64,000 bases of DNA from Hypanus sabinus (Eukaryota), in NCBI RefSeq assembly GCF_030144855.1, contig NC_082709.1:28644001-28708000 (forward strand), in the 5' to 3' direction. The notes under the pieces are model-generated. The model made no database searches. It was given only the letters and a program-made list of their open reading frames with translations, and was not told the DNA's origin. Every line of letters begins with the position of its first letter. Positions within the stretch are counted from its first letter, which is position 1. Made by a program: the position numbers and the translations under genes. Of the stretch, positions 1 to 41,502 are shown piece after piece.

Positions 1-2469
1 CTCGGCAATCTGACGACTTCTAGGTTCCAATTTATTCTTTTCCGCTTTACAAGCTGGAGTAGAAAGTAAAGTCTGCAGTTGTTCAATTCTGGCATTAAAC
101 TTTGCATAACCGGCGATCAAACTGCATTTACACTTTAACAGGGTCAGTGCGCAAGCCCAATAGTGCAGGAAGAGACGATTTTCGATGTCCGCTTTTATGC
201 ACAAGTTACAATGTCATGGTAAGGTTGAATAAAAAAAAAGTTAAGAGCAAACAGGAAAACGATTCTTGGGAGAACGGGGAAGATCATAGTATTACCAATG
301 TTAAACAACTAAACCCGGCGGTGTAATATCGTTACTAGCGGAGTCCACGCTGATAACGCAATGACGTGGAGATAAATTCATAAACAGTTTTCAGATATGT
401 AATCGAATTTACCCACATATTGCATAAATAGTGGCGATATACTCTCACACTGTCTAAATCTGCCAGGTACGATTGCCAGCATAACATCAATTAATCATTG
501 CAAAATGAGTGGAGACTCCGGTTCTGTTGTTGAGGTTTACATAGTGTGTTCCACGTATCAAATAAAAACTGGCTCACCTTTTATATGAAATCAAACTAAT
601 TTTATCGAATTTATACAATATCTGAAAGCTCCCAGAGGACCAGGCAGATGGGCGCATGATTTCAGAAAATACGTCGATGATGTAAGAAGTAATATCAAGA
701 TATCATTTTCGTAGCTGAATTCTCTAGTCGGGGAAATATTCTTAGCCTGGCTTATTTTATCAGGGTTTACAAAACTTATTTTCATAGCTTAACCAGATTT
801 CCGCCCAGTGGTACGGACAATTATATTCTTTTCAGAAAGAACGCTTATATGACAAAAATCACCATAATCAAATTCCAAACCAATTAATGAAACAGAGAGT
901 TATTTTGCTATTGCCGCATTTTATATTTTGGTGGATCAGTTATTTGTCTTTGTAGTATTAGAACCGGGGACGGGTGGTACAATGACACTAGATCAGAACC
1001 TTAGCGGTGATGTTATAACATGATAGAAATCTCACTGGAGGAATGAATTATGGAAACAAAAAAAAGCTTTCTGAGTGGAATTAATCTATAAAGGTGGGAT
1101 TTAAGTTTCACAATTTCATAAATTTAGACATTTATATCCACAGCTGTCCGATCTTTTGAGATATGATTTAAATCAGCCCTTGTAACAAACCTTTTTTGGG
1201 GTGGTTTCAATTCATTCATTGTTTAAAATACGGCCATCTGCAGAAAACTGTCTGCACTCCAGCCTCTCCAAACCACTCCAGAAAAAAGAAGTATTTTTGT
1301 ACTAATAGAATTCCAAAGGCTTAACGCTTTATTCGTGTTGCTTTGCATTTTAATTTCGCGTCCCTTGGTAGTTTTGTGGACACTAGGAGTTGCGTCTGAG
1401 AAATGGGCGCTTCGCGGTTACGCTTCTAGCGGGGCTCTTGTGCATATTTTTTCCCGTCAAATTATTTCGAAGAGTGAGTCCAGAAACGACTAGGTGATCT
1501 ACCGTCAACCTATCTAAACCCGCGGAAAGCACGAGGCAAAGGGGAAAAGGTGGATCCCAAATATCTACCAGACATCTTCTCACCTAATGAATTTGTTGTG
1601 TAACACTGTGACATTAGGTGCCGAGCTCCCTCGCTACCGGCGAGGAGAACCGTTAGCGATCCAAGGGATTCCAGCCTGTTTTCACTTTTCATAAGCATTG
1701 AATTTACTTGCACAGAACGAGGCCATTTTATCGATTTAGCCTAATATGTTATGAATACTGGAGGTGTTATTTCACTTGATTTTTTTCTCTCTCCTACAAT
1801 GGAAGCCGGAGGAGCCTAATGAAATGTCCCAATAGGTACTAGAAATGGAGGGTCGATATATATAGAACACGATAGCTCCACATACTGATAATCAATTTCA
1901 TCTTTCTCACCTGTGTAGAAGGCACTACCGGAACTTTAATTGTAATTTGTCACTATATTTTTTGTTTGAATTAAAGTAGCGACCATGGTGCAGATTTCAA
2001 CTCAGTGGCCAAACGTGCTTCAGATTCCTACCCTTGTTTGCTATTCTCAACCCGGCCAAATAAAAAGGGCTCAGGAAATCATGTCAAAGCAAAATCCGGA
2101 AGCCGTCTGATTCACAATTACCAAGATTGGGAAATGTGGCTCATACACGCTTCGTTCTTTGCAGGAGTTATTTTCGCTTAAAGAAAAAAAACTTATACTC
2201 GGCGTAGTGAAAACAAAAGGGCCAAAAGCTCCTAGATTATCAGATTGCGGGGGTTTGGTTGCTGTGGTGTGAAGTGCCCACTGTCAAAGGAGTTGATTCC
2301 CTTCATGTTTACGTTGCAGCTGCACTTCCGCCTGCATAGTTGGTTAGAATGTTCGTTACGATGCTCGTGATATAACAAATAGCTGTAGCAAAGAACTCGT
2401 TAAAGGAAACATGGCGCTTGCGAGCTGTACTTGCGAAATCCGCAAGGAATTGCAGCGAATTCCTTTTTG

Positions 2470-2590
2470 TTTGAAGAAAATTTACAACTTTGTAATGGAC
2501 CTTTTACGAGGGAGTCGGCGCTCCCATTGGCTAGTTTTGGTCATGTGAATCAAGTAACTGCGTTCATGGCCTTTTCATGATTTCCCTTGT
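2470..2590 (+). promoter_or_regulatory. Orphan Hox-type promoter module (no adjacent Hox ORF)
   Basis: TTTACAAC and TTTTACGA Hox/Cdx-type sites, then ATTGG (2526-2530), 11 nt, CATGTG (2542-2547), the same grammar as the gene promoters here; strong donor CCG|GTAAGT at 2942/2943 downstream. Confidence 0.6.
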
Positions 2591-5138
2591 GAATATTTCA
2601 CTGCATTCCGCTGCTAACTCGTCTCAAACCGTCTTTTCTGTCAGTATCTCCCCTTGACTGCTTTTGTCGTTGGTATTTGGCGCCAGCTGCTTGGGAAAAA
2701 AGGGAGACTTTCCGCTCTATTCGCGGCGTTCAATCCTTTTCTGTATAACTATGAGGAAGTCATTCGACTCATGCTGGGATTTAGCAATCTGATCTCTCTC
2801 ACAGACCTGTGACGTCTGCTTACGGTCTTTCATTTATCCTTCAATTCGCTTTACCTATTATAAGTTATTTTGATAATCGAAACTGTACAAATGGAATACA
2901 AAATCCACCTGGTTCCTAGTCTGGGGCAGCGTCATGAAACCGGTAAGTCTTCTGCTTTCGCTTGACGGTCTGGTGCAGATAGCGGTGTTGTAATGGGAGG
3001 CAACGACGTTGTCTTCGCTGGCTGAGTTCTAGGCAGCTGTTTGGAAGATCGAGGAAAGCTCGACATAAATTAATAAATACAAGACTGATTTTCAAACTGC
3101 GAGTGTCTAATCAGGTCCAGGTGGTCGACTGAGTGGAAACGGTGGCTGTGCGGCAGATTAATTAAATCTTTATTTTCCGCGATGAGGCTGAGAGTTGCGT
3201 TTCTTGCCTAGCTTTCAGATGATACCCTTGCTATTGGACAGCTGACATTTGTGGGGAATGTGCGAATTTCCCCGTTCAATTAAGTGTTATTAGTGTTATT
3301 TGAAAAAAAATACATATTTATTACTTTTATTATTCATGGCTCTATTTGGTTAACTTGCTGGACGACTGTCCAATGAACTGATGCATTGATTGGCGGCTTC
3401 AATATGTTTTTGCTGATCGGTGGTAATCCATGCTATTTTCTACCTTGCAGCCGAGGGTAGGAAGGTTGGTCTATTTTGCTCTGTCAAATAAAAAGTTGGA
3501 GCAATGAGTGATGGGCTTGTGTTAATGATCCTAATAAGTCTGTGCGGCAATCACTGGCTCTAGAAACATCAAGAGCCCTGGGATTGGGGGGGGGGCAAGA
3601 AATGTTTAGCTAACATTTTAATGATATTTTACCACGTGATAGTCGTTTGCGCAAATAAGCAGTGCTCTTACAGTAATTTTCCAGCGGTCAACATCAGACA
3701 TGCTTTCAATATGTTAATGGCGAATAAAGGGACATAGATATTTCTAATATTTTGTGGCTGGGCAAATAACTTCGGTCTGAACATTTGGAGAGTTGTTTTC
3801 TGAATATGATATACCGAGTTGTGATTGTTCACATATTTGTATTGCATACAAAAGCAAGTATCTCTTTATTCTGGGAAATGGTTCAGATTTGATATAAACA
3901 GTTGCAACTTCGTGTTAGCAACTTCATAATAAACACAAGGAGTAAAAAGACATTGAAACCTTTTATTCTGTTCTAATTTTTCAATATTAATTACAAGAGT
4001 CTCCTAAGGAAATATACACAACATAGGGCCATGTTATTATAAGGAAAAATGTAAAGAGAATATTTTATGATTGTTTTTTTCTTAGCCAGGTGTTTGAATT
4101 TCCGCTGATTAAATATTCGGAAACAATTGTTCATCATTTACCTGCAGTTTAAAACTTCTTTCTGAGTCAAAGATGTAGGAACAAGTGTTAAACTGCAGGC
4201 ACTTGGTAGTCAACGTTATTTGAATATAAACTGATCTGTCTTTCAGATTCCAAATTATTTATAGGAACTGAATCTTTTAAAAAGACCAGCTTGATCCATA
4301 TAGCATATAATTATATTGACTATAATTTTCCGTTGGCCATTGATATTGATTATCCAAGGGTTCTTTTAAATTGCAAATTACAATTTTTTAAAAAAACTTT
4401 TCTCCTTTTCTTTCTGTGTCTGTTGGACAGAATTGAAATGAAATTCTGACCACTGGCAATTAGGTCACAATGCATTACTAAAATCAAATGAACGTTTGTG
4501 ACGTTGTGACTATTATTTTATCGCGGCATAAATATTTAAGTATTTTTAATTGTCTACTTCAAGCACATTTGCCTCGGGAAAATTGCTGGTTAAATTATGT
4601 CAGACCGCGACAGTGAAGTGCACCGTACGCATTTTGCTTTATGGAGAAAGCATCTCGATCTTCAGGCAGTTACTGACTTTAATGATTCTCTGCAGTGTGT
4701 TTTCAAGATATCCGCCATCGCTATAATTTGTGGAACAAAGAAAACAATCTTATGCAGCAGTTATTAATTAAGATATTTTATCTCAGTTTAAAAGTGAGCA
4801 TATCAAATATTTGTTAGACTTTTCTCGTTAAACTAAATCTGTTTTGCGTTAAGAATAAGCTGTCAGCTTTTAGATTAGAGTGAATGACTTATTGATTTTC
4901 CTCGTTGCTTTCTTCCTAATGAGACAAAATTAGGAGAACAAAACTCTTGAACAAAAAAAGTAAATCTTCAAAATAAATATAATTAGCAAGTTCGTCTTTC
5001 TAAATCACAATCCCACCTACGATTTTAAGGTAGGACTACTTAATTTATTTTTTCAAGGCACGCCAGCAAAGGTTTCTGTGATATCTAAGTAAATGTGGAT
5101 ATTGTATTGTGTGGCGGGGGTGAGTGAGTGACTGAGAG

Positions 5139-5281
5139 NNNNNNNNNNNNNNNNNNNNNNNNNNNNNNNNNNNNNNNNNNNNNNNNNNNNNNNNNNNNNN
5201 NNNNNNNNNNNNNNNNNNNNNNNNNNNNNNNNNNNNNNNNNNNNNNNNNNNNNNNNNNNNNNNNNNNNNNNNNNNNNNNNN
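5139..5281. other. Assembly gap (143 N)
   Basis: Run of N preceded by GAGT/GA repeat-like sequence, probably a collapsed microsatellite. Confidence 0.95.
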
Positions 5282-8094
5282 GTATATGGAATCTTAAAGC
5301 CGAAAGGTTTTGCTCAGAATGCACTTCTATTATAGATGGTCAATGCTTAAATGTAATTATCAATTTCAATGCAACATACAAAATTTATTTTAAGTGGAAA
5401 AAATTTCAGTTCATTTGTGACTAAAGATAATCTGATTCCGCACAAAGCCCAGAACCTTTTAATTCATAACGTTCCTTTTCATTTTTAATATACAATATAT
5501 AATTGTAAGTGTAAGCAACTCCTAATAGGAATCCCGTACATTGAATCTGGTGTACAACTGGAATTAATTCAACGCGATCCTAGAGTTGCTCACTCTTTAC
5601 AGGACTGACAAACGAATTTCCAGCTCGCGATCTTCTCCCAATTTTATTACAAGGCACAACGCGCTGTAAAAGGGAAAATCAACAAAAATAATTAATATGC
5701 GGTGCGCGACTGGTTTCTTTCTTCTATTGTACATGAACGGGGCTTACAATTAGGTCTAGTGGAAGGTCTAGTTACAAGCTATTCTGCGTCAAAGGATTTC
5801 AGAAAATGATGATCGGCCGTCTGGATTTCATTTTAATTTAGCTTTACACCGAACTGGAAACTCTGATTTTACTCAACGTTTCTTTTTAAAGAACAGTACA
5901 GGAAAAATATAATTTCTTCCATCGACTGTCAGGCGGCTGCTGCAGGGTCATATTTACCAGAGCTAGACGGTTGGATTACAGCAATTACGATCTTGGCCCA
6001 TAATTATATGTATAAAAACTCACGAATCAACATTCCCCGCCGATAAATGAAAGCGAATGTTATGCTGTGACATATAATCTAAAATATCCGTTAAGATACC
6101 TTTTCTTCCCTTTAAACTTAATTCATCTCAAGTTATAAATTGCTCGTCTCTTTACTGTCATTGTTATGTTCAGAACACCTTCAATCCGGGCCGCCGCCGG
6201 TTCTCCTGGGAAGCCCATAATCCTTCCAATAATTCGGAGATCTGTGCAGTTTCAGACAATGGACGGTGGGCCCAACTCCCGACCGTCTATTACTTCTTGC
6301 CTCCAGACATGAGTTATTTTACTGTACTTTAGCTCTATTATTTTAAGTAACCGCAGTACTTATAAGGCAGAGGAGCATTGAGAGCCTGATTTGCCCACAT
6401 TACAAGACAATCGTATAAACACTGTAAATATATTCCTTACACATCCTATAAATCAAACACTGTTCCAAACTCAAATCACGCGCGCGCGCTCGCGAGTGTG
6501 ATGGTGCAGTGGCCAAATAAACTAGGGATCTATTTCATTAATTCAGTTGGGAGCACCCTATTTTAACCCCTAAAAGAAAGCACCCATGCACCCAGCAGCA
6601 GATAACTGAAACCCACGTGCGTTACGTATCACTGAGACAATGGGCGGATCTTTGCCAAATTCTTCAGACTCAGATGAATGCAGTCACCGTTTTGACATCG
6701 TTTCATTACCTTTATTAGTTGTGCCGTTCCGGATCACAACCAAACGTTTATAATTCGACTATTAATCAAAGAGGGAAAGGCAAACGCTGTTTTAAAGTAA
6801 TATATTTATTGCTTTCGCGGTTTCCCTGCATTTGTGGCCAATTGGAATCCATTCGATGTGTCTGTAACTGTTGCACCGCAAAGTCCGAGGAAGGACAACG
6901 AACCGAAAGTGCTGTCCTTGTAATTTGCACCATTCGTTTCTGAAATCTTCCCAATCAGTCTTGGATTTGCCAAACTGCGGATATCGGTCAGATCTTGTTT
7001 CAGATCTAATAGAAATATTCTGACCTACCATAGCTTATAATTCAGGGGAAACCACCGTGCAGTTGGATTGTACAAAGGGGAAGAAGTCTACAGCGCACTT
7101 GGCCTGAGTGTTACGGCTATCGTGGCTGGCCTAGACATAACTAGTCACAAAATAAAATAATATATGACATAATGTAGATTCCTAATCATTTTTATTTATT
7201 TTACCAAGGTCTGATGAAAGCAGGACGCAAGTACTTAGCTAAAATCTGGACTCAAGTGTCCAAAATTTACTAAAAGGTTGATCACGTGCACGTACATTGA
7301 AAAAGCTAACTGTAAACTTTGTGAAGTCGATTCTTTTTCCTGTAAAGGTAAATGATTATTGGGTAGGCAATCTAAGTTCAGGATTTTACGAAGGTAACAC
7401 TGCGGTATTTGTAAGCTTTAGTAATGTGTGCAATGTGTATAAATGTGAACCGTACGTTCGATTCAGGTCATTACCTGACATCATAATTTCTCCGATACCC
7501 TTTAACACCAAGGAGAATTGCGCAGTAATAATAATTACTGTAAATATTTAGGATTGTATCCTATCAAGCTCTTCGTCGTGAATCTATTTACAGTGAACAT
7601 CAAATTTTGAGGTCAAGTACATTGTTAATACAAGTAAAAGCGTTCCAATTCAACACACATATTCTAAATGAAAAGATGTGTCTTATACAATAAAACATGT
7701 TAAATAATTTGGTAGCAATTTTATGGATCAACATTATCGCATGAAATTTTGAGTCTCAGGATAATCCTAGTTTATATAACATGGCCATTTTAAGTAAACT
7801 CATTTCGTATTTATATAAAAGTTTTGCGTTTGATCACCTATACGTGCCTCTGATGTATAAGTGATAATTTCAGAAAGCAGAAAGAAAATGTTATCGCTAA
7901 CGATAATCTAAATAGTGAAGCATTGTAAAAGCTGAAACCATTCCGCAAAATACACATCAGTGTCTTTCAAATTCGCTCGATCGATATGAGCCTGGCTTTC
8001 TCTCTGTTTATCAGAAGGAGGCGCTGTAGGACAAGGCTCGCTAAATCATGGCACGCATTCTCACTGCATGTATTACCCCCAGGGTCAGGCACAA

Positions 8095-8165
8095 GAATTT
8101 ACGACTGGTCAACAAAAGCACGTGATCTAAACTTATGTCCCATATTTGGTTGCATACGTAGGAGG
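8095..8165 (+). promoter_or_regulatory. HoxD5 proximal promoter block
   Basis: AATTTACGACTGGTCAACAAAAGCACGTGAT...CCATATTTGG...TACGTAGGAGG, recalled as the block upstream of Hox5 paralogues; E-box 8119-8124, CArG-type box 8140-8149. Confidence 0.75.
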
Positions 8166-8269
8166 CAGAGAAATGACATGTGCCTTTTATTTCCATATTT
8201 CATTATATATCGCTCGTTCTGGCGGCGAATAAACGTCTAAGAACCACAAATCAATCCCCTGAAAGGCAG

Positions 8270-8777
8270 ATGAGTTCCTACTTCTTAAACTCTTTCTCAG
8301 GTCGCTACCAAAATGGCCACAATTATCAGTTGCAGAGTTATGGGAATGCCTCGTCTGTGGGCGAGCATTTTAGGGAATCGACGATGCTCTCCGCCAGGTA
8401 TGGCTATGATTACACTGGGATAGACCTCAGCATGACTCGTTCTAACTCAAATCTTCGTGGAGACAGTGAAAGGTCTGCTAACTACATGCAGGCAGCCAGT
8501 AACACCTTTCATAGTTCATCTGGTGCGAGAGCTAAGTCTCCTGATCCTGCGGTCTGCTCAGGGTCTTTAATAAACCCAACTAACAGTACTGTTAAAACGG
8601 GGACTACAGTCACAGGGCCAAGTCATTCATACCGCTGTGGTCAGGACACATCACCGTTAACCGATGAGCATCTTAAGGGAACGAACAGCCCCAAACCAGA
8701 AAGTGGGCAACTAGACAAGGATTCAGCACAGCAGATGCAGATATACCCATGGATGAAAAAACTTCACCTTAACCAAG
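8270..8777 (+). CDS. HOXD5: HoxD5 coding exon 1 (spliced protein 249 aa)
   Basis: Starts [16 protein letters not shown] (Hox5 N-terminus), has [11 protein letters not shown] and hexapeptide [10 protein letters not shown]; ends at phase-1 donor CAAG|GTACGC at 8777/8778. Confidence 0.93.
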
Positions 8778-9134
8778 GTACGCTCAAAGCCGCCATTCTG
8801 CCTTTTCATATGCATTTAAATTTTGATCGAAGTGTTTTTTTAGATTGAGAAACAAAGTAACTTAATAAAAATGAATAAAGAATGATACTTGTAAAAGTCT
8901 TAACAGTTTGAATGAAATCCCAGTGCACGCTGTTGCTTTGACCAGTTACACCAATTGTGTCAAGAACGGCAGCATTTGAGCATCAGCGATTTCCGTTAAA
9001 ATTTAAATAATTTACTTACTCCAATTTACAGATCCTACTAATTTTGTTCTGCACTTATGTGTCTGAAACTGTATAATTTAATATAATTTAGTAATCTAAT
9101 GCGTATAATAATTCGTCTTTAACTTTTTATTAAG

Positions 9135-9376
9135 AAGGCTTAAGTGGACCAGAAGGGAAACGAACGAGGACAGCTTATACCCGCTATCAAACCCTGGAGC
9201 TGGAGAAAGAATTCCATTATAACAGATACCTTACACGACGCCGGCGGATAGAAATCGCTCACGCCCTGTGTCTGACTGAAAGACAAATTAAAATATGGTT
9301 CCAAAACAGAAGAATGAAATGGAAAAGGGATAATAAATTGAAGAGCATCAATATCAGCCCTCCAGGAGGGCCTTAG
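9135..9376 (+). CDS. HOXD5: HoxD5 coding exon 2 (homeobox); absent from the ORF track
   Basis: Acceptor TTTTTATTAAG|; translates (E)[79 protein letters not shown], stop TAG 9374-9376; in frame with exon 1. Confidence 0.95.
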
Positions 9377-10819
9377 CTGGTTACACCTAACTGGCTATAA
9401 TATTACTGTCCTTTTCGTTGCAATGGAAATGGTTGTTTGGGCACATAAAATACTGAGATACATTAATATCGTGTGGGTTCAAAATCTTGTCATCAATACA
9501 CTTCATCAGTTGTCATCTACAGATGTTAAATTTTTTCTAAATATATATATTTATAATATCTATGCCTAATTCAGATAACAAGAAAGAACAATAAAAAGGT
9601 CAGCCGGCATAAGGCAGCCAAGCAAACCGTTTACCTCCGAGAGCAGAATGAAGTTGTTTTCTGTGTCCGGTTGCTGAACAAACCAATCTTCTACCGGTTG
9701 ATAGCTTCGTTAAAGCTATAATTTGATCATGTTTTGTAAAGTTAGATAAATATTGTTGCTTTCGTCTTTTTTTTACATCAAAGGTGATTTTTTTTAAAAA
9801 ATCAGTGCTGGGAATCGTGGCTGTGATCCCAGGTATATCGTGTGATGTAAATTCTGTACATACATAATGTTTAAATGTCTGACTTTGTGCTAAATAAATG
9901 AAATGAATGGTGTTTTGTCTACAACATTGAAATAAACCCAGTTTTACCAATGAACATTCTCACCTATTGTCTGCAGCTCCTGTCCGTGTACAGAACTCCT
10001 GGCAACAGGCCACTTGTAAAACAACCAAAGTCACCCTCTGAATTTCGCTTCTATTCATTCTACCTAATTCTTATGAAGGTTCTAGAGCTGCGCTCGCCTT
10101 GATTGTTTTCTGTCGCATGTTGTTTATGTCAAGAATTCTTGGTGGAGCTCATACCTATTTGATATTCTGTTTTTTTAAGGGAACATTCCTTCGTTCATAA
10201 ACTTCTGCATCTAGATTCCAGGAAGGTTGATTTCCAAAAAAAAAGTTTGCTAAGTTGTCGTCTAGTGGTGGAACAATATAAGTTGGCTTTCTAATAATTG
10301 GTGGCTATTAGCATTAAATATTCCGAAAATGTATAAAACCTATTGTTGGGACCTAGCTTTGGGGACCAGGGAGTTCTCGATTAGTTTCATTGCACTGAGT
10401 CATTCAGCAGAAGAAACTGTAATGGGGAGTTAAACTCTAAAGCAGGAAGAAATGGTAGATGATTGAAGCAATCGAAATAGGAAACCGATGTCATAGGAAA
10501 CTCTTAATGTCAAAAAGCAATTCTTGTTTGCGTTCCTAATCGGCACAGCTTTATTTCACTGTAGCTCACAAGCTATCGGTCACAGATGCTCACTGTATAT
10601 TTACACTTACCAAATCTAATAGATCGTCGTGGCTGCCTAGGAAATGTCCAAACTGCGCCTTAAAATAAAGAAAACTCATTCTCCAGGGCACTCGTCCTCT
10701 GTGTACTCAGATATATAGCTTTATATTACTGGGAGAGCATTTCAATGAACATGGCTGTCTTTAGTGAAAAGAAGTTTTAAAGTTTAAGGGTTATTTATAT
10801 GGACGCCACAGAGCCAGGT

Positions 10820-10905: not shown

Positions 10906-13900
10906 ATATATTAGGTTAAGAGCAGACAAGTGCAGATGGTTAGTGTTTTCGAGGTCTGTGGAAAGTGACACCAAGAAGCTGGCTGTCCTGTTTCGCCGTT
11001 ATGCACTGTAAGTGTCCAAGTGGTTTCTACCTTTGCGCTGGAGAAGCAGCAAGTAAGTTCTTTCTAGTCGGTAACAGGGCTGGTGGGCGCGTGACACCTG
11101 ATGTCATTCGAGCCTCTTAGGCGCATGTACTGTTTCTCGGTTAGGCAAAAAATGTAGTCCAACATGCGTTCAGTTCCAACAGCCGTCTGCAATGAAGGCT
11201 GTACGTAATGAATAAGTACGAAATTAATATTGCAGTGAACTAAACAAGATAATATTACGTATGATATTCTATTTTAATTACAGTTATAAATTGAAGAATG
11301 AAGTTTGTCACGATGGCTTAAGCATTCCGTTAAAGAAAAAAACTGAAGCAAACATGAGCATATTATAACCAAATTGGAATAAAATTCTTTACTCAGTTAC
11401 TAATATTTCATGTGCTGAATAACGTTCATTACAATCAGAAAATACTGAGTACTTCCTGATTGTTGTGGGGTTTTTTTAGTGGAACTTGTAGGATATTGAT
11501 ATACAGTACACCGAATACCAAACACTTCCTTTTTATCTGCGAAGCTGTCTAAAATATACCTGGGATATAGGAAATATTTTTAAAAAGCATATCTGTACGT
11601 TATGCAAGCAAATGTCGGTGACCTTTATTGAGACCCATTTTAATCTGCTGGTATTGTTTCACATTGTTAAATAATCTCATTGGTTGTAGATGCCAGGATT
11701 TTATTCACTGTCCCGAGGGTTTTGTAATCGATCACATTCGTTGAAATTTGCATAAGAAGTATAGAACAATGACGAACAAGGTGCTGCTCGTGTATAAAAT
11801 AGTGAGCGGTAACTTTTCACAATTCCCATCCGAAAAGGAACATCCTAATTTTTTAAAGTTGCTATAAGAGCGTTCCCAGCAAATGGAGCAATGTTATCTG
11901 ATTTACTGTTTGCAAAAGTAAATGCACAAACCTCGTGTTCCTGCTTACTGCTACACTTTGACTTTAGAAAGAGAAAGCGGGAACCTTTGCAATCGTACAT
12001 TATATAAATCGGGATCCAGCTCCCCACCCAATACCAAGTCCCCCAGATTCACGCAAGTGAAAGGAGAATAAACACCAAATATCTCTCGAAATTTATATAG
12101 TTCTAAAACCTAAAATGAAAACTGCCCGCATAGAAAACTGAAAAAAAAGTGTTGGGCAGTGGATTAGGTGTTCCAAAAAATAAAATCTGGTCTGTTAGTA
12201 TTCCTTTAACCAGCTTTAGTTTAGTGGTAAATTCTAAAGCTGTGCTTTAATATAAAAAACAACAGAAATAAATATTTTTAAATTCTTAGAGGTTAATGGG
12301 GTAGATAAGCAAAACGCATGAAAGCTTTGTATGCTCCAGATAGTCAACGTCACTTGCACTGACAAAATAGCGATAAGAACACATGAAGAAAATATTTTTA
12401 TGGGTGAATTATAGCGGAAAGATGATGTCATTTATTATCCCATGATCATTAAAAATCGATGCTTTATTTGAATATAGCTTATTTTGAGATAAAAATTAAA
12501 CAATCATCTTCCAATGGAAGAGCGAACAGAAAGGACACACCAAACAATACTAATGATTACAATAATCTCACTGAATCGGTGAAATAATGAGCTTTGTGAA
12601 CTATGCTTTATTTTCTGCTTTCCTTGGAGTTAACTCAAGGAAACAAACTGGCACGATCAGACCAATTAGCAGGACAAAGCATAAATGATCGAATTTCTAT
12701 TTTCAATCTTGTACTTTGTAAACGCGGGTTCGTAATTCCACATATATTGTGATCACAATGACTATTTCTGACTTTGCAAATAAAATATGCACGACGCTGC
12801 GGTGTTTGTAATGCTCCCTAAGATTAGAACATCCACCAGTGCTCATATTTTGCATTGGGTGCTACGTTATTTGATTTACTTAGCTTATGTTGTTTTGTTT
12901 TATTTGCAGACGTGACAGAATGGAGGAAGCAACGCAGTAAGTAGCTAAGAATTATTTCTTATTAATGTAGCGAAAAGCTGGAAACCGTTGGCCGTTTTGG
13001 ATGAAAAGTTTGTGGAGAATATCGCTGTTGTTGCGTTGTTAGCCTAAAAGGACTGGTACCTTGGATTCTGAAATGATTCTCGTAATAATTGTTCTGAACA
13101 GTTACATTCTTTTGTGATATTCTATTTGTGATAACGATGTTTGAGACATCTTGTAATTGCATTTTATTTCCGCGAAAAGGGCGGAATTGTTGTACAGAGC
13201 GCGTTTAAAAGTTGATTATGTTTAAATCTAATTACCTATGACAGTATGGTACCGAAGCAGATTTAGCTGGCTTGTTATTATGAACCGGCACTGCGGCACA
13301 GCGCCTCCCAGTGCAAGGCTGCATTTTTAAAAGGTCATTTGGAGGAAAGTTATTGTTCCGGTTTCAACATCTGCAAAAACGATTTGGCAAATGACGTGGT
13401 AATAATTATAGTAGATGTTTAAAGTTTACCCTTAATAAACTAACAAAGGCGTGTAGGCTAAATCAGATATTAAATATCCCTTGATATCATGGGCATTGTG
13501 TACATGTAGGCCAAACATGAGGCCTTGTGCTTACGAGAATTTTAGATAAAGTATTCGTTTAACGAAACATTTGTACTTCTTTTCTGGAATTATCTCTTCG
13601 CCGGCGTGCCTTTGTAAAATATCGTGGACAGTTTGTACAGGTTACCAGGTCGTTGGGAGAATAGTTATTAATTAACGACTCAGTGTTTATACAATTCTTC
13701 TTTCTAAAATAGGGATGTGAGCCTGTACTTCATATAGTTTGTTAACAAGGAACAGGTCATGGGGATAATTTGACCCGATCATTTTAATATTATTTATTTA
13801 AGTTAAAAATGGGATCACTATTCGTACAACAAAAAAAAAGCCCGAGTGTTTTACTCGTTAAATTAGACAGATTTGGCCCTTATATTGCAAAAGGACATCC

Positions 13901-16249: not shown

Positions 16250-16331
16250 CGTCGTCTATATATACCCTGTAGAACCGAATTTGTGTGATGTCTCGGTCAC
16301 AGATTCGTTTCTAGGGGAGTATATGGTCGAT
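16250..16331 (+). ncRNA. MIR10B: mir-10b precursor hairpin; mature 5p 16263-16285, 3p arm ~16299-16320
   Basis: Exact miR-10b-5p TACCCTGTAGAACCGAATTTGTG with complementary arm ACAGATTCGTTTCTAGGGGAGT; canonical position between Hox5 and Hox4. Confidence 0.97.
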
Positions 16332-23379: not shown

Positions 23380-23475
23380 TTATATTTGATTCGGCCACGT
23401 GATTTACTAAATAATTAATGCAGTACGTCCCGAAAGAAACACAGCGTCGTCATTAATCGGCCAAGCAAAGGACTC
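23380..23475 (+). promoter_or_regulatory. Hox4-Hox3 non-coding element; possible distal HoxD3 promoter
   Basis: GGCCACGTGAT E-box, TAAATAATTAATGCAG and GTCGTCATTAATC homeodomain sites; donor TAG|GTAAAC at 23586/23587. Confidence 0.55.
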
Positions 23476-25149
23476 TATCACACTTGAAAAGTGAACAGAT
23501 CCCAAGAATATTATATACAAATGGTCCGCTATCAGACTTTGCTGTTGTAGTTCGTTGCCAGAAACTGAAAAATGGAAGCTTGGTAGGTAAACAATTTTAG
23601 TTTTGTTTCTGGTAAGATAGCAAATGAATGTAACTGTCATATATATTTGATGAATAGCGCCCTTTGCTTCTTACTATGTGCTACCAAGCGACAGTCATAA
23701 GTTGCAGTAGGCTGATATACTGACCTTCTATTCGGATTAGCTTTAACATTTTGGAGCAACTATGATAAACTTCAGGTGCAAAAATTTGTATCTGCTATAT
23801 CTTGGAGGTGGGAGGTAAACATTAGTAAGACTGCGGTGGGATTATTATTAAGGCGTAGTTTTGTGTCCTGAAATGGCGTAGATTTTACGGTTTACTTGTG
23901 CTTTATTGCAAACAATGCCGGCTGTCATGGCATCTGCTGCCTATTTGTACACAACGAAGTAGAGGCCTGAGCTTATATTGAATACCACGAGTCATATATT
24001 TTGTGTTCTTTGAGACGTAATAGAAAGTCTGTAAATGAGATTCAGCGAGAACAATTGCAGGTACTTACGTCAACAGAAAATATATTCATGGGCATTTCGT
24101 GCCTTATATTTTAGTTGATGTGTTGTTATAAAAGATGAAACAAATGTTTCCTTTGAACCTACGAATTTGTTTTTACAGTTAATTGGCATTTATTTCTTAC
24201 AATGGAAGGCAAAACGAGTATTCACAAATTCTTAAGTGTGCGTTAGGCTCATTTTAAGAATAATTGGTAGTGATTGATTCTCTGAATAAGAACAATTATG
24301 AGCACATTTTATAAGGTAATAGATTAACAGAATTCTGATTTTCTGTACCTATATTAGTATGAGAAAGTGCATTAAAGTATGGCTAACGTATATTGTGGAT
24401 GATACAATGCTGTGAAGTACAAGCATGAACTGTTTTTTATTACTGTTTTTTACAGTAACATGCAAAAGTTTTATTACGAGGGTAAAGATTAAAAGTATAT
24501 TGTCAGTAAGCATTTTCAGTTATAATACTGAGCAGAAATGTAAAATCTTTTTGTGAAAAAGGAGAAAGGATTCTACAATCCAAATCATCATAATTGAAGC
24601 AGCAAAGAATGTAATCGTATATATACATCAATAAATATTCTTCAATAACAATAAATTACACTGCAGGCTTTAGTGGCATACCATGACAGCTCCGTTCCTT
24701 CCCCCATCTCTAAAGGTGTAATTAAACTATATAAATTACCGTGGCAAATACAGATGTCTTTGAGAAAGGATTTTATTAAATTGATTGGAGATATTTTACA
24801 ATATGAACCTTCGCATTTATTGCTTCCGTTGCTTTTGTCGTAGCGCTCTTCTGGAAATTGAATTTGCGCTGTCGTCACGTGTGTAAAGTCGACGTTCGTT
24901 TCCTTTTTAAATAAATTATGCATTAAAACAATAACCTATTAATTCAGTTATTCGCCGATGACAAATGCAACGCTGTTTTACTGATGACAAAGTTGCGGTT
25001 GTGAAGCCAAGTTGTTTTTTTTTAACTCTCTTCAACTCTGCATTCTCTACCCTTTAAATTCTGATCCAGCAAAGAATCGGGCAGACAAGAATCAATGAAA
25101 ACGGTTTAATTACAACTTTTTCATTAAATCGAAATAAAGTATTATGGTG

Positions 25150-29480: not shown

Positions 29481-32332
29481 TGGAATTTCTTTGTGCATTT
29501 GATCTGCCACAATTGCTGATTTTTCTTAAATGTATTTCTAAATTAAAGCATGCATTTTAACTCAGTATAATATTCAGTGGTACAATTTCTGCACGACTTC
29601 AGGTCCGGTGCGTGTTCTATCTCCCTCTTTCACGGAAATTTGAAATTTGGAGGCTCCAGGAGAGCTGTGTTATTGCATTTATATGATCTTTTGTATAACC
29701 GAAGTGTTTTTGTTGTTATGAATATGCCCAATCGATATAAAATAATACGTACGTGATGTTTGGTATCCCAATGACAAAGCATAACCGCCTGTCAATATAA
29801 TACATTATACATGAGTTTTATATATGGCGCCAGGCTCTTTCTTGCAATCCTCCATATTTGTATTGTTTTGTGCTTTTATGTAAAAAATGTTCGACAACGG
29901 CGTCAATTTTTCACTAAATACACATATCTAAACATCAACAGGAAAAGAAATATATCTAGGAGGTATATTGATATGGTCAGATTGGGGCTTGGAGATACTA
30001 AATGCAACCCGGTACAAATTCCAGATTTTTATTCAATGCCTTGTTTAGGCCCGGCTTCTATTAAACGACCATTTCAGATGTACCTTTCTGGGAAAGTGCA
30101 GAAATCCACCTTCAGAGCAAACTGCTGATTCGCTAATTGCGAATTTAGATATAAAATCCTTGATGCTATTGATAGATTTTCACGGCAATAACAACTTAAA
30201 TTTCGAAAACCGCTTGACATAAATGATTGGTTATTGCATTAAAATTTTTGTGAAGCTTTATTTGTCAAACAATTCCCCAAAAATTCAAATTCTAATCTTT
30301 ATCATTACTATATCTATTTAACCCGTTCTTTCACTTTAAAAAAGTCACTGACAATGTGACTCCCAGTCATTAATCACACAGCATTGCAATCAGTAACACT
30401 TTGTTTCTAATTTCTGAAGGGAAGGAGATAATACTTAATTTATTTCTGCTTTCATTTAAAGAATAACCAAATGCAATAGGAATTGTATAAAAGGTCACCA
30501 CGAAGCATTGTTTTAAATACTTCTTAATATAAACAATAAAAATATTCTTATTAAAAATGAATCTTCGCCGCCTGATGCTGGTTGTTTTCTTTGATAGGAT
30601 CCGGGAAGGCAGCCTGAAATATATGTGATATACAAAAATATTATTAATGTGTTTGAAACAGAAAATGACATTTTCTTTCAGAACAAAGCCAGCGGCCCCT
30701 GGTCAATACGGACAAATTACACATTCAATCCACAGAAAATCAGATAAAAACAGTGCGTCTGGTGAGTTGTTTGATTTTTCTTTGCTCCCTTTTGCTTAAC
30801 AGCTCTGAATTTCATGCGCCTTGGATTCTGTGTGCAACTGAGATTTGTCAGTGGAGAACTAGTTCGTACTTTTATGTTATGGCCATGAGAAAACAAAGAA
30901 GAAATGAAACATGTTTGAACAGACAGGGACGAGATACTTGGATTCTTTATGTATGGCTCTTCTCGAGATGTCGTCATGTTCTACTTTGAGCTGCAAGCAA
31001 ACTTTTGAAAACTTATCGGTAATTCTAAAGGCTTGGGTTGCATCTGTTAGTACTTCAAAAATATAGATCATATAGACCCACTCTGGAGCATACAGAGTTG
31101 AAAATAAGACAAAGTGAACATTTGTTTAAGCTCACCACTTCACTGTCATTCTTAGTGCACAGAATGAGAATTGTTTATAGTTGTTCTTTAAATCTGCAGT
31201 ATTTATCCAAAATAAAGATTTATGAAGTCTTGGGAAAGTGGTTCGTTCAAACAGTAACGTTATCTCCCTCACGTTACTTTTGTTACATTGTTGCTTAATC
31301 TCTCTCGTTAAATTCAAAATTAAATACGTTTCCATCTACTCTGCTTCTTTTAAATCTTACATCGCTCTTAGTTAAAGGGATCAACACAATTGCTTTGTAC
31401 TAAAGTATATAGTTTATAATTTAATTAAAATACATGGCAGACTCATAAAATCAGCACTTTTTGTAATTTGTATATAAGGGCCGTAAATCTCATGTAATCT
31501 TGGCAGTCTACGTTAAATGTGTTTGCCTACATACTCAAAGTCGTATAAAATAAACTTCCCAAAAATAAGTTGAAAGATGAATCGGGATGCATGTTTCTTT
31601 TGTACAATCTCTCTGGCAGCCTGGGTTGCTGTACCACAGTCGTGGAAAGAGTGCCAAATCATTCCATTTGAAATCCAAGTTTTAAACGTCTCCCGTCCAG
31701 GAACCAGCCGCAGATTTGGAGGGGATTGCGTGATGCTAGCTGAAATATGGGCAGATGTGTCTAGGCAGCCGAATTCCTTGTCAGAAATGATCCGCAAAGT
31801 ATAAACAAGATCAATATCGTTAGATTCCAAAAATAATCCTCAGCAATAGCTGAGGGCAATAAATATTTTCGTAACAAAACATATCACATGATTAAATAAT
31901 TTGTAGTATACGTTACGTTTAAGATTACTGAGCAGATTACATTACACTGAATACACTCGCTAGTTAGTGACTTTAACAAAATAAAAACATAAGCTTTCAA
32001 GTCCCCCTTTTTTGACTCCATACCTGAAATCAAATACTTGATTTCAAATTTGGCTCCCAACTTGCATTTATCAAAAATAATTTTCAGATCCTCCAGCTCG
32101 AGCCATACGATTCTGCTACATGTGAAAAGTTCGCCAGCTAAAACACACTTAAGATTCCTGGACTACTTTCAAAGCCTTATATAAAATCCTACAAGAGCTG
32201 GCGAAACGTAGGTAAAAAAAAACTTGCGGAGTGTGGACATTCTTTTTCGGCTTTCCTCCTCCGCTCTAGCTATTTTACACTTCTGAAGATAGCAGTTCTT
32301 TGGAAAGTGTTTCTTTCCCATTCTGAAGTGAA

Positions 32333-33113: not shown

Positions 33114-35543
33114 CGAGCAGTTGGAGTTTCTGGGCCAGATTTTCAGCTACACTACAGTCTTTTCACATTACCTTAATATTAATGTTAGATTTGATTCTCC
33201 GAAGATAACATTTCCAAATGCACTGCAAACGAGAAAGCTGGTTGTGATGATCAAGTTTCAGAGCCCGCAGCAGTAGATAATTCTGGGTTACTTTCTTATC
33301 TCTCACATAAAATACTGATTAGATGGGGAGACGGGGTGGGGCAAATAGAAATGTAATTAGATTTCAGATAAAAAAAAGTCAAGCAAAGAACAGAAATCTA
33401 ATGCCAATTTTATTAAGCTAAAATGGCGAACATGGTCATGACGGGAAAACTGGGTATAACAAAACACATTAAAATTTAACGAAAATGCCTAGAAACAAGT
33501 AACGGAAGGCTAAAACAACATTGAATTACTTCTTTGAAGGGAACAGCAAAGATGTGCACGTGTGCCGAGCTGCAACTTTGGAGGCCACAGATCATAAACC
33601 TCATATTTCATTTTAATGTCAGGTCTTGTATGGCTGAAGGCTTTTTTTCCAAATGAATAGAAAATCTATTTGTGACGTGATATAGTAGCCAGATAAGCCA
33701 CACGTCCAGTACTTGGGCCAGTTTATTCAAGGATGTTTTATTTAAATGGCTTTGTAGACTAAGTATTATATTTGAAGCTTAAATCCAGGTCAATCATCTT
33801 CGTGTTATGTTTCAAGTTTATGTGTTTTATAACGATTTGTTTCAATGTAACTATTTAATTCTAATCACAACAGTAACCTACTAGTTTAATACATAACTTA
33901 GGGCGATCTAAACGAGAACAAGGCACTTGATTCAATCAAAAAGGTCTGATTTTATTGCTGACCACAACAACCAACCCCCAATCCTCTACCACCACCTCCC
34001 CCCACGCCCCCCACGCCCCCCACCGCCCAGTTCACGCAGACATCGGCCATTTGGGAGGTTTCCTGACTACGTCAGGTTAATTCTGTTTAAAAAAAAGGCT
34101 ATTGCCAAGAGTTTGTGAGAAATTAAATGTAATTATCTTACTAATGCCACTGTAAGTAACTAAAGGACGTTTGTTTGATTGGAACTAGGGTAAATAAAGT
34201 GCATATATATAATTTTTCGTCTGAATTCAGTTGCAATAAAAAAGTCTGTTGATTGAAAAGTTGATGATTAGTTAACGCTAAAAAGTACATCTATTCGCTA
34301 CTTTATGTGTTAGTTTAGCTGGGCTTTGTGTATGTTGAAATAGATTTATTCAGTAATATGTTATTTTGTGGACAATGCCATGATCTAAAGATGCAGTTAA
34401 GTAGCACAAAGCAAATGTGAAATGCTGACTTCGTCATTTCTCTGTTTTTGTTTAGAATAAAGAGTTTGAATAGGTGCTAGTTATACTTTAACTACAATGT
34501 CTATCCCCTGTCATAAAGCAAAACGAGCAACAGAAAGAAACATTCGCTTAAAACAAACCATTCTTACGTTGAAGGAAAAGAAGCCAACAATGGTGAGGGT
34601 ACACTTCGCTGGTTTTTCAGGTTTTGGAACTGGTCCGATCCATCATGTCGAATGTAATAGCGTCCAGATCTCAGAATAAAACAGTCTGTACCCACAGCAA
34701 ATGCTGCAGGCAAATAAGTCGCCTGTGACTGTGGGGATTTTTTTCACTCTTTTTAAGAGGGGTCTTTTTGTTTCTCACCATTACAAAAATGGCCTCAATC
34801 AGTGAAGTCAACTGGAATAGCACTGTGTGTCCCACCGAAATCCACTTAGATCAAGCATGACAGGGACATATCTAGCGTTCTGTAATATCCATTAACTTTG
34901 AGATTATGGTATAGGAAAAAGGCACATTTGGGCTTTTTTTGGTTCTAAATTTTGAGATATATTTCAAATGGTACAACTCATCATTTTTCTTAACATTCCT
35001 TTATATAATGATTTGGTAAATGAATTAAAAGGACAGTTTGTCTGTAGTGAATCTCAGTAAGTGGATAATGCAGTGTAGATTCAAATAATAATAATAAATT
35101 GCCAAAGAAGTGCAATGTAATTGTAATCGTTCATACATCACTTGAACTATGAGCATTTTATACAGCTTGTTCAAATTATCATAGAGAACTGAGTATACAA
35201 ACTGAAGCTAATTGCTTCCAACTGAAGAAGGAGCCAACTCTTAAACTTATTAGAAAATTATAATAGTCTCTCTGAGTTTGTCAACTATTATATTTTATAT
35301 TTCACTTACTTATTTATTGTCTCATAAAAGAATATTTCTCAAACTTGTAAAGGGAAAAAAAAGATCAAGTCTACTAATGACAAGATTGTGAAATATCATT
35401 CATGGGATGAATGTTTTATTTTAGTTTGTAAGCTAAAGCAATTATGGTCCAAACATTTCACTCTATTATGTTTTGTTTTATAACATCTAGGAGCTCTGCA
35501 TTCTGACGATTGTTGTAAACGTGCTGTGTGATCAAAGGTGTCA

Positions 35544-36027
35544 ATGCTATTCGATAAGGGTGTCAAGACCCTGTCATTTCGAAATAGCGAGATGCAAAAA
35601 GCAACTTACTATGACAACTCTGGAATATTTAGTGGTTATTCCTACCAAAAATCCAATACATACAACTACAGCTCAAGTCATCAAGCTTACCCACCATCAT
35701 CGGTTGACAATGATTATCAGAACTCAACGTGCCCAATTCAAACATCTAATGCCAGAGCCCAATCCCATAAGCCCACTGATATAAATGGCAGCTGTATGAG
35801 AACAGGTGGCAGTCAAGGCACTGCCCAACATCCAAGCATCAGTGAGCCACAGCAACCACCTCCTTTGCCACCTTCACCCAATGGAAACAACGCTGCAACT
35901 CAGAAACGAACCAAGTCCATTCCAAATTCTTCCAGCAGCCCGGCTGCCACACTTACCAAGCAAATCTTCCCATGGATGAAAGAATCTCGACAAAATGCTA
36001 AGCAGAAAAACAGCTGCACAGTTGCAG
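35544..36027 (+). CDS. HOXD3: HoxD3 first coding exon (spliced protein 410 aa from ATG 35544; second ATG at 35592)
   Basis: MQKATYYD motif preceded by a 16-aa MLF... extension typical of HoxD3; KQIFPWMKESRQN hexapeptide; exon acceptor TAG|G at 35490/35491; phase-1 donor GCAG|GTATCT. Confidence 0.95.
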
Positions 36028-41156: not shown

Positions 41157-41502
41157 ATGAGCAACGAATTTGAGCGTGAGGTTGGTTTTATCAATAGCGA
41201 GCCATCGCTCGCCGAGTGTCTGACATCCTTTCCTCCTGCAAGCGAGACATTTCAAAGTTCATCAATCAAGAACTCGACGCTTTCACATTCGACACTGATT
41301 CCTCCTCCTTTTGAGCAGAGCTTCTGCAGCTTGGACCCCGGTAACACACACCAAAATGGGAAAACCCACACTTCAAAAGGCATTGGTCGGGACACGTTAG
41401 GGGACAAACCTCTGGAATATCCGTGGATGAGAGAAAAGAAACAGCTCAAGAAAAAAACAGTCCCTGCGCCAGGATCATTCTCATCTTGCTCTTCCAATGA
41501 AG
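41157..41502 (+). CDS. HOXD2: HoxD2 coding exon 1 (spliced protein 363 aa)
   Basis: MSNEFEREVGFINSEPSLAECLTSFPP and TLIPPPFEQ (Hox2 motifs), EYPWMREKK; phase-1 donor GAAG|GTCGGG is weak but restores frame with exon 2. Confidence 0.9.

What the first reader, a model, noticed from the sequence alone, without database searches (positions are those of the whole stretch)
2470..2948. Gene-less Hox promoter with a first exon ending in a phase-1, 17-codon ORF
Seen: a CCAAT/E-box module at 2526-2547 has no Hox ORF next to it. Downstream, an ATG in strong context (ACAAATGG, 2891) opens MEYKIHLVPSLGQRHET and runs into a consensus donor CCG|GTAAGT after 52 nt, i.e. phase 1. All five homeobox exons here are phase-1 acceptors. 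Known: HoxC4/5/6 share an upstream first exon at a comparable cluster position. Inference: this promoter outlived HoxD6/7 and could splice onto HoxD5 exon 2 (9135) or later homeobox exons, giving homeodomain proteins without the YPWM Pbx-binding motif. Short ORFs at 2751 and 2771 could dampen translation.
Basis: partly seen in the sequence, partly recalled or inferred. Interest (0 to 1): 0.72.

Follow-up and report, generated by a model that had tools for sequence, protein, structure and literature searches.

The report
Shared leader exon between HoxD8 and HoxD5
In the Atlantic stingray HoxD cluster, the spacer left by the lost HoxD6/7 genes holds a very well conserved, spliced leader exon that genome annotations join to several downstream genes. 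This is a known kind of Hox arrangement, not a source of hexapeptide-less Hox proteins.

Summary
The window is the Hypanus sabinus HoxD cluster (D5, mir-10, D4, D3, D2, D1, all on the + strand). ATG 2891 opens 17 codons and runs into G|GTAAGT at 2942/2943 in phase 1, behind a CCAAT/E-box module at 2526-2548.

The stretch is 94% identical in sawfish, 84% in electric ray and 80% in whale shark. The ATG, the 52-nt length and the donor are kept in all four.

It is not gene-less. In the NCBI annotation, two Hypanus products have coding ranges that start exactly at 2891: a 444-aa homeodomain protein reaching HoxD1, and a 289-aa metaxin isoform. Hemitrygon has the same metaxin isoform. In two sharks, annotated isoforms begin with the same mini-ORF joined in frame to an acceptor inside HoxD5 exon 1 (window 8301). 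They therefore keep YPWM.

I found no support for joining to homeobox exons. The peptide shows no coding-type constraint (variable sites by codon position 8/5/5). The most conserved part is the untranslated 2561-2700.

Small RNA-like runs hold the exon but hardly any of the adjacent intron.

Verdict: a new member of a known kind, the shared upstream Hox leader exon.

The parts
2526..2548 (+). CCAAT (as ATTGG) plus E-box module, ATTGG-N11-TCATGTGA. It is a candidate NF-Y/USF-type Hox promoter module.
   Evidence: One search gives the sequence. One search finds the same module 183 nt before the D2 ATG and 147 nt before the D1 ATG (4 hits against 0.36 expected). In one search, ATTGG and TCATGTGA are invariant in four species while the spacer varies in the shark. 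Protein binding and promoter activity were not tested.
2560..2942 (+). Leader exon. The 5' end is not determined. It could lie further upstream, since an acceptor-like pyrimidine tract plus AG ends at 2477.
   Evidence: 2561-2700 is 99% (Pristis), 94% (Narcine) and 96% (Rhincodon) identical to Hypanus; small RNA-like runs hold 0.41-0.86 of the sampled words of 2500-2950 but 0-0.28 of those of 2960-3410, while genome-sized runs hold both. CpG observed/expected is 0.8-1.3 over 2300-3300.
2891..2942 (+). Mini-ORF of 17 codons plus 1 nt (phase 1): MEYKIHLVPSLGQRHET.
   Evidence: NCBI coding ranges of a 444-aa and a 289-aa product start at exactly 2891. The ATG and the length are kept in four genomes, and the ORF heads shark isoforms P0006, P0163, P0161 and P0162. 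Variable sites by codon position are 8/5/5.
2943..2948 (+). Splice donor GTAAGT.
   Evidence: It is invariant in Hypanus, Pristis, Narcine and Rhincodon. Conservation drops after it: whale-shark identity is 59% over 2943-3000, and four-species invariance is 37% over 2960-2989.
8277..8301 (+). Acceptor inside HoxD5 exon 1 (pyrimidine tract, CAG, exon restart at 8301). It is the in-frame partner of the mini-ORF.
   Evidence: Shark isoforms read leader-G-RYQNGH.... The site ...TCTTTCTCAG|GT is kept in four genomes. The predicted Hypanus fusion is an open 256-aa frame collinear with P0163. Its use in Hypanus is not shown.
12910..12936 (+). 27-nt microexon that lies in the 5' untranslated part of HoxD3 mRNAs. 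It is a possible next exon after the leader.
   Evidence: Skate RNA contigs L007-L009, L013 and L014 carry it ahead of exon 30682-30761. L008 and L009 begin with CCG, the last 3 nt of the leader, and not with the CAG of the intron end. That is only 3 nt and therefore weak.
16256..16327 (+). mir-10 hairpin. It lies in the intron of any transcript that runs from the leader to D4, D3, D1 or the metaxin gene.
   Evidence: Rfam RF00104, 71.4 bits. Its role as the host transcript is inferred by analogy with mouse Hoxd4 P2 (PMC3185001).
30682..30761 (+). 80-nt untranslated exon of HoxD3 mRNAs.
   Evidence: skate RNA contigs L006-L014.
35491..36027 (+). First coding exon of HoxD3. The acceptor is at 35491 and the ATG at 35544. 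It is not a homeobox exon.

Best explanation
The stretch is a conserved alternative leader exon of the anterior HoxD genes. It lies about 4.07 kb behind the HoxD8 stop codon, in the spacer where HoxD7 and HoxD6 were lost.

A Hox-type CCAAT/E-box module (2526-2548) and a CpG-rich patch mark the likely promoter. The exon ends at the strong donor at 2942/2943. That donor is joined to acceptors of several downstream genes:

- an acceptor inside HoxD5 exon 1 (two sharks);
- transcripts filed under HoxD3a (cloudy catshark);
- a product reaching HoxD1 and a metaxin isoform, presumably MTX2 (stingrays).

Long transcripts from this exon also carry mir-10 in an intron.

The 17-codon ORF is probably a by-product. 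It acts as an upstream ORF or an optional N-terminal tag, not as a selected peptide.

Shown: the sequence features, the deep conservation, the annotated coding starts and shark isoforms, and the exon-versus-intron contrast in runs.

Inferred: promoter activity, the start site, use of each junction in Hypanus, descent from the HoxD6/7 promoter, and the role as mir-10 host.
For: - Identity of the cluster and the gene map.
- Coding ranges starting at window 2891 for a 444-aa homeodomain product that runs past 48108 and for a 289-aa Tom37/GST_N_4/GST_C_6 product in Hypanus. The same 289-aa product starts at the matching place in Hemitrygon.
- In Mustelus, the coding range of the leader-HoxD5 fusion starts 4112 nt after the HoxD8 stop, against 4072 nt in Hypanus.
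- Shark isoforms start MEYNIQLVTILG... fused to ...GRYQNGH.... The S. torazame ones are filed under Hox-D3a, which implies exons shared with HoxD3a transcripts.
- HoxD4 is not listed as its own gene in Hypanus. That hints it is merged with a leader-using gene (compared).
- Conservation is 94/84/80% over about 880 nt. It is highest in 2561-2700 and drops after the donor.
- RNA-like runs hold the exon but hardly the intron.
- The promoter module is shared with D1 and D2.
- The canonical HoxD5 mRNA uses its own proximal start, so the leader is an alternative start.
- Known parallels: Hoxd4 P2 and the long Hoxd3 transcript (PMC3185001); Hoxa5 long transcripts from the Hoxa6 and Hoxa7 promoters (PMC2868907); the Hoxc4/5/6 shared exon (PMC1831499).
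Against: - No read-level junction or start site could be obtained for Hypanus.
- The run types are guesses ('RNA?').
- The annotation evidence is computational (NCBI's automatic gene models), and I could not read the exon chains of the 444-aa and 289-aa products.
- An acceptor-like site ending at 2477 means the exon could be internal in some transcripts. The CCAAT/E-box module would then lie inside RNA.
- Outside the module there is no significant similarity to other Hox promoters in the window.
- The ATG, frame and length are conserved in six species, which is also what a real coding exon would show.
Confidence: 0.62

Rival explanations
1. The mini-ORF is a real coding first exon. It gives a HoxD5 isoform in which the N-terminal [10 protein letters not shown] is replaced by MEY..., while YPWM and the homeodomain are kept. 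This isoform would have been conserved since the shark-ray split.
For: The ATG, the 17-codon length, the open frame, the donor and the in-frame internal acceptor CAG|GT are kept in four genomes. The isoform is annotated in two sharks. The first residues MEY.I are constant. The Hypanus fusion frame is open for 256 aa.
Against: Variable sites by codon position are 8/5/5, so there is no third-position excess. ORF identity to the whale shark is 75%, against 96% for the untranslated 2561-2700. The last five residues differ freely (HET, PYA, LEP, PEA). Three to four upstream ATGs precede the ORF if the start site is near 2560. No ray fusion protein is on record. The internal acceptor is fixed by HoxD5 coding anyway.
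Confidence: 0.2
2. One reading: the leader joins directly to the homeobox exons (9135, 18539, 37360 and others) and yields short homeodomain proteins without the YPWM motif.
For: The phases fit. The leader plus 9135, 18539 or 37360 gives open frames through the homeodomain. All Hox homeobox exons here are phase-1 acceptors.
Against: Phase 1 is universal in Hox genes, so the fit is expected by construction. No annotated product and no RNA contig shows such a junction. The short HoxD3-like database proteins are intron-retention products, not leader fusions. The junction that is seen goes into exon 1.
Confidence: 0.05
3. The element is mainly a DNA-level control element (enhancer, insulator or CTCF site) of the HoxD8-D4 spacer. 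Its transcription and splicing would be incidental noise that automatic gene models pick up.
For: The strongest conservation lies in the untranslated 2480-2700, above that of HoxD5 coding DNA. A CTCF-like match (13 of 15) lies at 2679-2693 on the - strand. The mouse has a bound CTCF site just 3' of Hoxd8 (PMC8559674).
Against: A match with 2 mismatches is expected about 7 times by chance in this window (my estimate from the consensus). Its strand is opposite to the forward sites described for that part of the mouse cluster (PMC8559674). The donor GTAAGT is invariant and conservation falls right after it. The same exon is used in annotations of four species from independent data sets.
Confidence: 0.13

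Closest known systems
Mouse Hoxd4 upstream promoter P2 with its non-coding exons, and the long Hoxd3 transcript that starts there (PMC3185001)
   Same: Both are an upstream start inside the HoxD cluster, ahead of miR-10b. Both have untranslated leader exons spliced over long distances to Hox4 and Hox3 coding exons. In both, the microRNA lies in an intron.
   Different: Here the exon lies upstream of HoxD5, a gene mammals lack, and about 14.8 kb before the HoxD4 ATG. It carries an ATG that the annotation uses, and it also reaches HoxD1 and a metaxin gene. Orthology with the mouse exon was not tested.
Distal promoters of mouse Hoxa5 long transcripts, at the Hoxa6 promoter and near Hoxa7 (PMC2868907)
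   Same: Promoters at Hox6/7 positions drive long, alternatively spliced transcripts that reach the Hox5 gene. They are highly conserved, and the long forms are not the source of the main protein.
   Different: In HoxA the Hox6 and Hox7 genes still exist. Here their coding parts are gone and only the promoter and leader remain.
Shared upstream non-coding exon of Hoxc4, Hoxc5 and Hoxc6 (cited in PMC1831499)
   Same: One leader exon is spliced alternatively to several downstream Hox genes.
   Different: That exon is non-coding. This one offers an ATG in frame with HoxD5 through an acceptor inside exon 1.

Membership tests
Shared upstream leader exon of a Hox cluster (polycistronic cluster in the sense of PMC1831499) | The exon lies upstream of at least one intervening Hox gene, on the same strand. 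| tested here: met
   It lies 5.3 kb before the D5 ATG, 14.8 kb before D4, 32.7 kb before D3 and 46.2 kb before D1, all on the + strand.
Shared upstream leader exon of a Hox cluster (polycistronic cluster in the sense of PMC1831499) | The same donor is joined to exons of two or more different downstream genes. | tested here: met
   The evidence is indirect, from annotation only. Two Hypanus products have coding ranges starting at 2891. There are HoxD5 fusions in two sharks, and the S. torazame ones are filed under Hox-D3a. No read-level proof was obtained.
Shared upstream leader exon of a Hox cluster (polycistronic cluster in the sense of PMC1831499) | The exon has its own transcription start, that is, it is a first exon. 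| not testable with these tools
An acceptor-like site ending at 2477 leaves an internal-exon reading open.
Hox proximal promoter with CCAAT and E-box | A CCAAT box and a CAYGTG E-box about 10-11 nt apart, upstream of the transcribed part. | tested here: met
   The module is at 2526-2548. The same module precedes D2 and D1 (4 hits against 0.36 expected). The motif bases are invariant while the spacer varies. Factor binding was not tested.
Protein-coding exon under purifying selection | An excess of third-position (synonymous) change, and a conserved peptide. | tested here: not met
   Variable sites by codon position are 8/5/5. The ORF is the least conserved part of the exon. Peptides: MEYKIHLVPSLGQRHET, MEYKIHTIPTGGRRHET, MEYNIQLVTVLGKRPYA.
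Protein-coding exon under purifying selection | The start codon, frame and length are kept across species. | tested here: met
   This holds in four genomes and two further shark isoforms. With only 52 nt and high overall identity, it is weak evidence.
CTCF site of the HoxD8-D4 spacer (mouse CBS1, PMC8559674) | A core motif CCASYAGRKGGCRSY, in forward orientation. | tested here: not met
   The best match is 13 of 15 at 2679-2693 on the - strand. A match of that quality is expected by chance, and its strand is opposite to the forward sites described for that part of the mouse cluster.
Orthologue of the tetrapod HOXD3/HOXD4 distal first exon | Sequence homology and matching position behind HOXD8. 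| not tested
The position, about 4 kb behind HoxD8, fits my recollection of the human HOXD3 gene model, which is a lead only.

The most novel reading that the evidence does not exclude
A relic promoter of the lost HoxD6/7 genes has been kept for roughly 250-300 million years. It supplies a second, translated start for HoxD5. The resulting isoform lacks the N-terminal SSYF end but keeps YPWM and the homeodomain, so it could have different activation properties. The same donor also ties HoxD1 and the neighbouring metaxin gene to Hox-type control.
Probability: 0.18. Interest if true: 0.55.

Novelty: new member of a known kind. Interest (0 to 1): 0.34.

Why it matters
The finding shows that when Hox genes are lost, their promoter and leader can survive as a start site for the remaining neighbours. 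This helps explain why Hox clusters stay compact and transcribed in one direction.

It also gives a concrete, testable case of an alternative HoxD5 N-terminus in sharks and rays.

For annotation, it warns that the 444-aa 'homeodomain' and 289-aa metaxin products starting at 2891 are probably artefacts of choosing the longest ORF on leader-containing transcripts.

Tried and rejected
The filter says nothing about the biology.

2. I could not rebuild the exon chain of the 444-aa product.
   - Enumerating splice paths gave 6759 solutions.
   - Chains restricted to known Hox exon ends gave 39.
   - Single-exon fills gave many more.
   - None is decisive. A chain through HoxD5 exon 1 is unlikely, because a search that allowed 142-451 aa found no such protein.

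3. The HoxD1 search among cluster representatives returned no 444-aa entry.

4. The look-up of S. torazame HoxD3a returned only an older assembly without the leader. The look-up of P0006 was not on record.

5. Local alignment of 2500-2760 against the upstream regions of D5, D4, D3, D2 and D1 was not better than shuffles. Paralogy with other Hox promoters therefore rests on the module alone.

6. The CTCF-site idea is not supported.

7. Short HoxD3-like database proteins of 264-304 aa are intron-retention products, not leader fusions.

8. A relic of Hox6/7 coding sequence inside the exon was looked for by eye only. Nothing convincing was seen.

Full report
**What the window is.** Homeobox motifs on the + strand at 9296, 18706, 37539, 42045 and 50131, and a mir-10 hairpin at 16256-16327, mark a Hox5-4-3-2-1 run. 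The HoxD5 exon 1 translation is 100% identical to 'homeobox protein Hox-D5 isoform X1 [Hypanus sabinus]'. The gene map is:

| Gene | Coordinates |
|---|---|
| D5 | ATG 8270, exon 1 ends 8777, exon 2 9135-9376 |
| D4 | ATG 17711, exon 1 ends 18122, exon 2 from 18539 |
| D3 | acceptor 35491, ATG 35544, exon 1 ends 36027, exon 2 from 37360 |
| D2 | 41157-41502 and 41857-42602 |
| D1 | ATG 49049, exon 1 ends 49625, exon 2 from 49958 |

The HoxD8 coding range ends 1181 nt before the window. The finding therefore lies in the D8-D5 spacer, where D7 and D6 are missing.

**The observation.** These are ATTGG at 2526, TCATGTGA at 2541-2548, ATG 2891, 17 codons, one extra base, and GTAAGT from 2943.
- The context is cAAATGG, with C at -3, so it is adequate rather than strong.
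- Two of the five 'homeobox acceptors' are not homeobox exons. 12910 opens a 27-nt microexon, and 35491 opens the first coding exon of HoxD3.
- The module is not a chance match. ATTGG-N10/11-TCAYGTG occurs four times in the window against 0.36 expected. Two of the other hits sit 183 nt and 147 nt before the D2 and D1 start codons.

**Conservation.** I fetched the D5 loci of Narcine (L001), Pristis (L002) and Rhincodon (L003).
- Window 2300-3200 aligns at 84%, 94% and 80% identity over about 880 nt.
- In the four-way alignment A1, the ATTGG and E-box bases, the ATG, the 52-nt length and the donor GTAAGT are invariant.
- The best conserved part is 2561-2700, at 99, 94 and 96% identity. That is higher than the block spanning the HoxD5 gene in Narcine (83% over window 7810-9500).
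- The ORF itself is the least conserved part of the exon, at 94, 81 and 75%.
- Conservation falls just after the donor.
- Within the ORF, the variable sites fall 8/5/5 on codon positions 1/2/3. This is not the pattern of a selected peptide.
- The peptides are MEYKIHLVPSLGQRHET (Hypanus), MEYKIHLVPILGQRHET (Pristis), MEYKIHTIPTGGRRHET (Narcine) and MEYNIQLVTVLGKRPYA (Rhincodon).

**It is not gene-less.** The gene tables that come with the contig look-ups give coding ranges. For HoxD5 the range is exactly ATG to stop.
- In Hypanus, two further products have ranges that begin at locus 4622, which is window 2891.
  - One is a 444-aa homeodomain product whose range runs past window 48108, so it must end in HoxD1.
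  - The other is a 289-aa product with the Tom37/GST_N_4/GST_C_6 families of metaxins. It is presumably MTX2, the known neighbour of HoxD1.
- In Hemitrygon akajei, a 289-aa metaxin product starts at the matching place, 4075 nt after the D8 stop against 4072 nt in Hypanus.
- HoxD4 is not listed as a separate gene in Hypanus, although it is in Hemitrygon, Narcine and Pristis. The table keeps only the longest product of a gene. This suggests that HoxD4 transcripts share an exon with the 444-aa model.

**The in-frame partner.** The HoxD5 homologue list contained a 258-aa 'Hox-D5 isoform X3' of Mustelus asterias.
- Its sequence, and those of its cluster mates, begin MEYNIQLVTILG[KN]R[LP]E[PA]. They then continue with G-RYQNGHDYQ..., that is, HoxD5 from residue 11 on.
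- The Scyliorhinus torazame pair is filed under 'Hox-D3a isoform X2/X3'. This implies that NCBI merged them with HoxD3a transcripts through shared exons.
- The acceptor is the CAG|GT formed by codons 10-11 of HoxD5, behind a pyrimidine-rich run. It is present in all four genomes I hold and corresponds to window 8301.
- The Hypanus fusion would be an open 256-aa frame collinear with the Mustelus isoform.
That acceptor lies inside exon 1, and the product keeps YPWM and loses only [10 protein letters not shown].
- In Mustelus, the coding range of this isoform starts 4112 nt after the D8 stop, the same place as in the rays.

**RNA evidence.** I have no junction reads and no start site for Hypanus. 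I worked beside those places afterwards. Two indirect lines remain.
- *Run contents.* Fourteen small runs (23-241 million letters, type guessed as RNA) from several studies and closely related organisms hold 0.41-0.86 of the sampled words of 2500-2950. For the adjacent 2960-3410, only four of them hold anything (0.07-0.28) and the best holder drops to 0.00. The genome-sized runs hold both stretches at 0.63-0.86. That is the pattern of an exon followed by a spliced-out intron.
- *Skate RNA contigs.*
  - The canonical HoxD5 mRNA starts at its own proximal promoter, window 8128-8173. The leader is therefore an alternative start.
  - HoxD3 mRNAs carry untranslated exons matching window 12910-12936, 30682-30761 and 35491 onward.
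  - They also carry alternative first exons at 23468-23582, 23991-24060 and 34453-34593.
  - Two contigs start with CCG before the microexon. CCG is the last three bases of the leader and differs from the CAG that ends the intron. This is suggestive but far too short to count as proof.

**How it most likely works.** The best reading is a conserved alternative promoter and leader exon. Its strong donor pairs with whichever downstream acceptors are available in long transcripts through the anterior HoxD genes and beyond.
- This matches known cases.
  - The mouse Hoxd4 P2 promoter has five non-coding exons, hosts miR-10b in an intron, and also gives a long Hoxd3 transcript (PMC3185001).
  - Mouse Hoxa5 long transcripts start at the Hoxa6 promoter and near Hoxa7, and are not translated into HOXA5 (PMC2868907).
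  - Hoxc4/5/6 share a leader (PMC1831499).
  - Hoxd3 and Hoxd4 exons are intermingled in the mouse (PMC6613147).
- The position, the Hox-type module and an earlier scan note of a HoxD7 promoter relic just upstream (s1-187750, not checked by me) fit descent from the HoxD6 or D7 promoter. That descent is inference.
- The mini-ORF is most simply an upstream ORF, which the automatic gene models promote to a coding start whenever the frame stays open.

**Rivals.**
- A truly translated HoxD5 isoform is not excluded, because the ATG, frame and acceptor are kept in six species. It lacks any coding-type signature, however.
- A purely DNA-level element is suggested by the extreme conservation of 2480-2700 and a 13-of-15 CTCF-like match at 2679-2693. 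That match is at chance level and lies on the opposite strand to the forward sites described for that part of the mouse cluster (PMC8559674). The invariant donor and its use in four annotations also argue for a real exon.

**Novelty.** Shared Hox leader exons and Hox6/7-position distal promoters are well known, and the exon is already used in RefSeq models. What is new is modest:
- its survival in the D6/7-less elasmobranch HoxD cluster;
- the in-frame acceptor inside HoxD5 exon 1;
- its reach to HoxD1 and a metaxin gene.

I rate it a new member of a known kind, with interest about 0.34.

Noticed in passing
window 23468-23582: An alternative first exon of HoxD3 mRNAs. It is 100% identical over 115 nt between a skate RNA contig (L006) and the stingray genome, and a GTAGGT donor follows it. 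This is unusually strong conservation for an untranslated exon.
   Followed up: partly
window 12910-12936, 30682-30761, 35491-35781: If the leader joins the microexon, the 80-nt exon and the exon that starts at 35491, its ORF stays open for about 150 codons. It then overlaps the HoxD3 start codon in another frame. Such an overlapping upstream ORF would hinder HoxD3 translation from those transcripts.
   Followed up: partly
window 2679-2693 (- strand): A CTCF-like motif (13 of 15 to CCASYAGRKGGCRSY) lies inside the most conserved part of the leader. It is one of only two such matches in the window, but the match quality is at chance level.
   Followed up: partly
window 8128-8173: The 5' ends of seven skate HoxD5 mRNA contigs fall here. 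This places the proximal HoxD5 start about 100-140 nt before the ATG.
   Followed up: yes
window 9135-9137: HoxD5 isoforms X1 and X2 (249 and 248 aa) differ by one Glu at the exon 2 acceptor. This is a tandem acceptor (AAG|AAG) annotated in several rays and sharks.
   Followed up: no
I did not test it. No fetched RNA contig contained it.
   Followed up: no
window 5139-5281: A run of 143 N (assembly gap or mask) inside the leader-to-D5 intron. I left it as it is.
   Followed up: no
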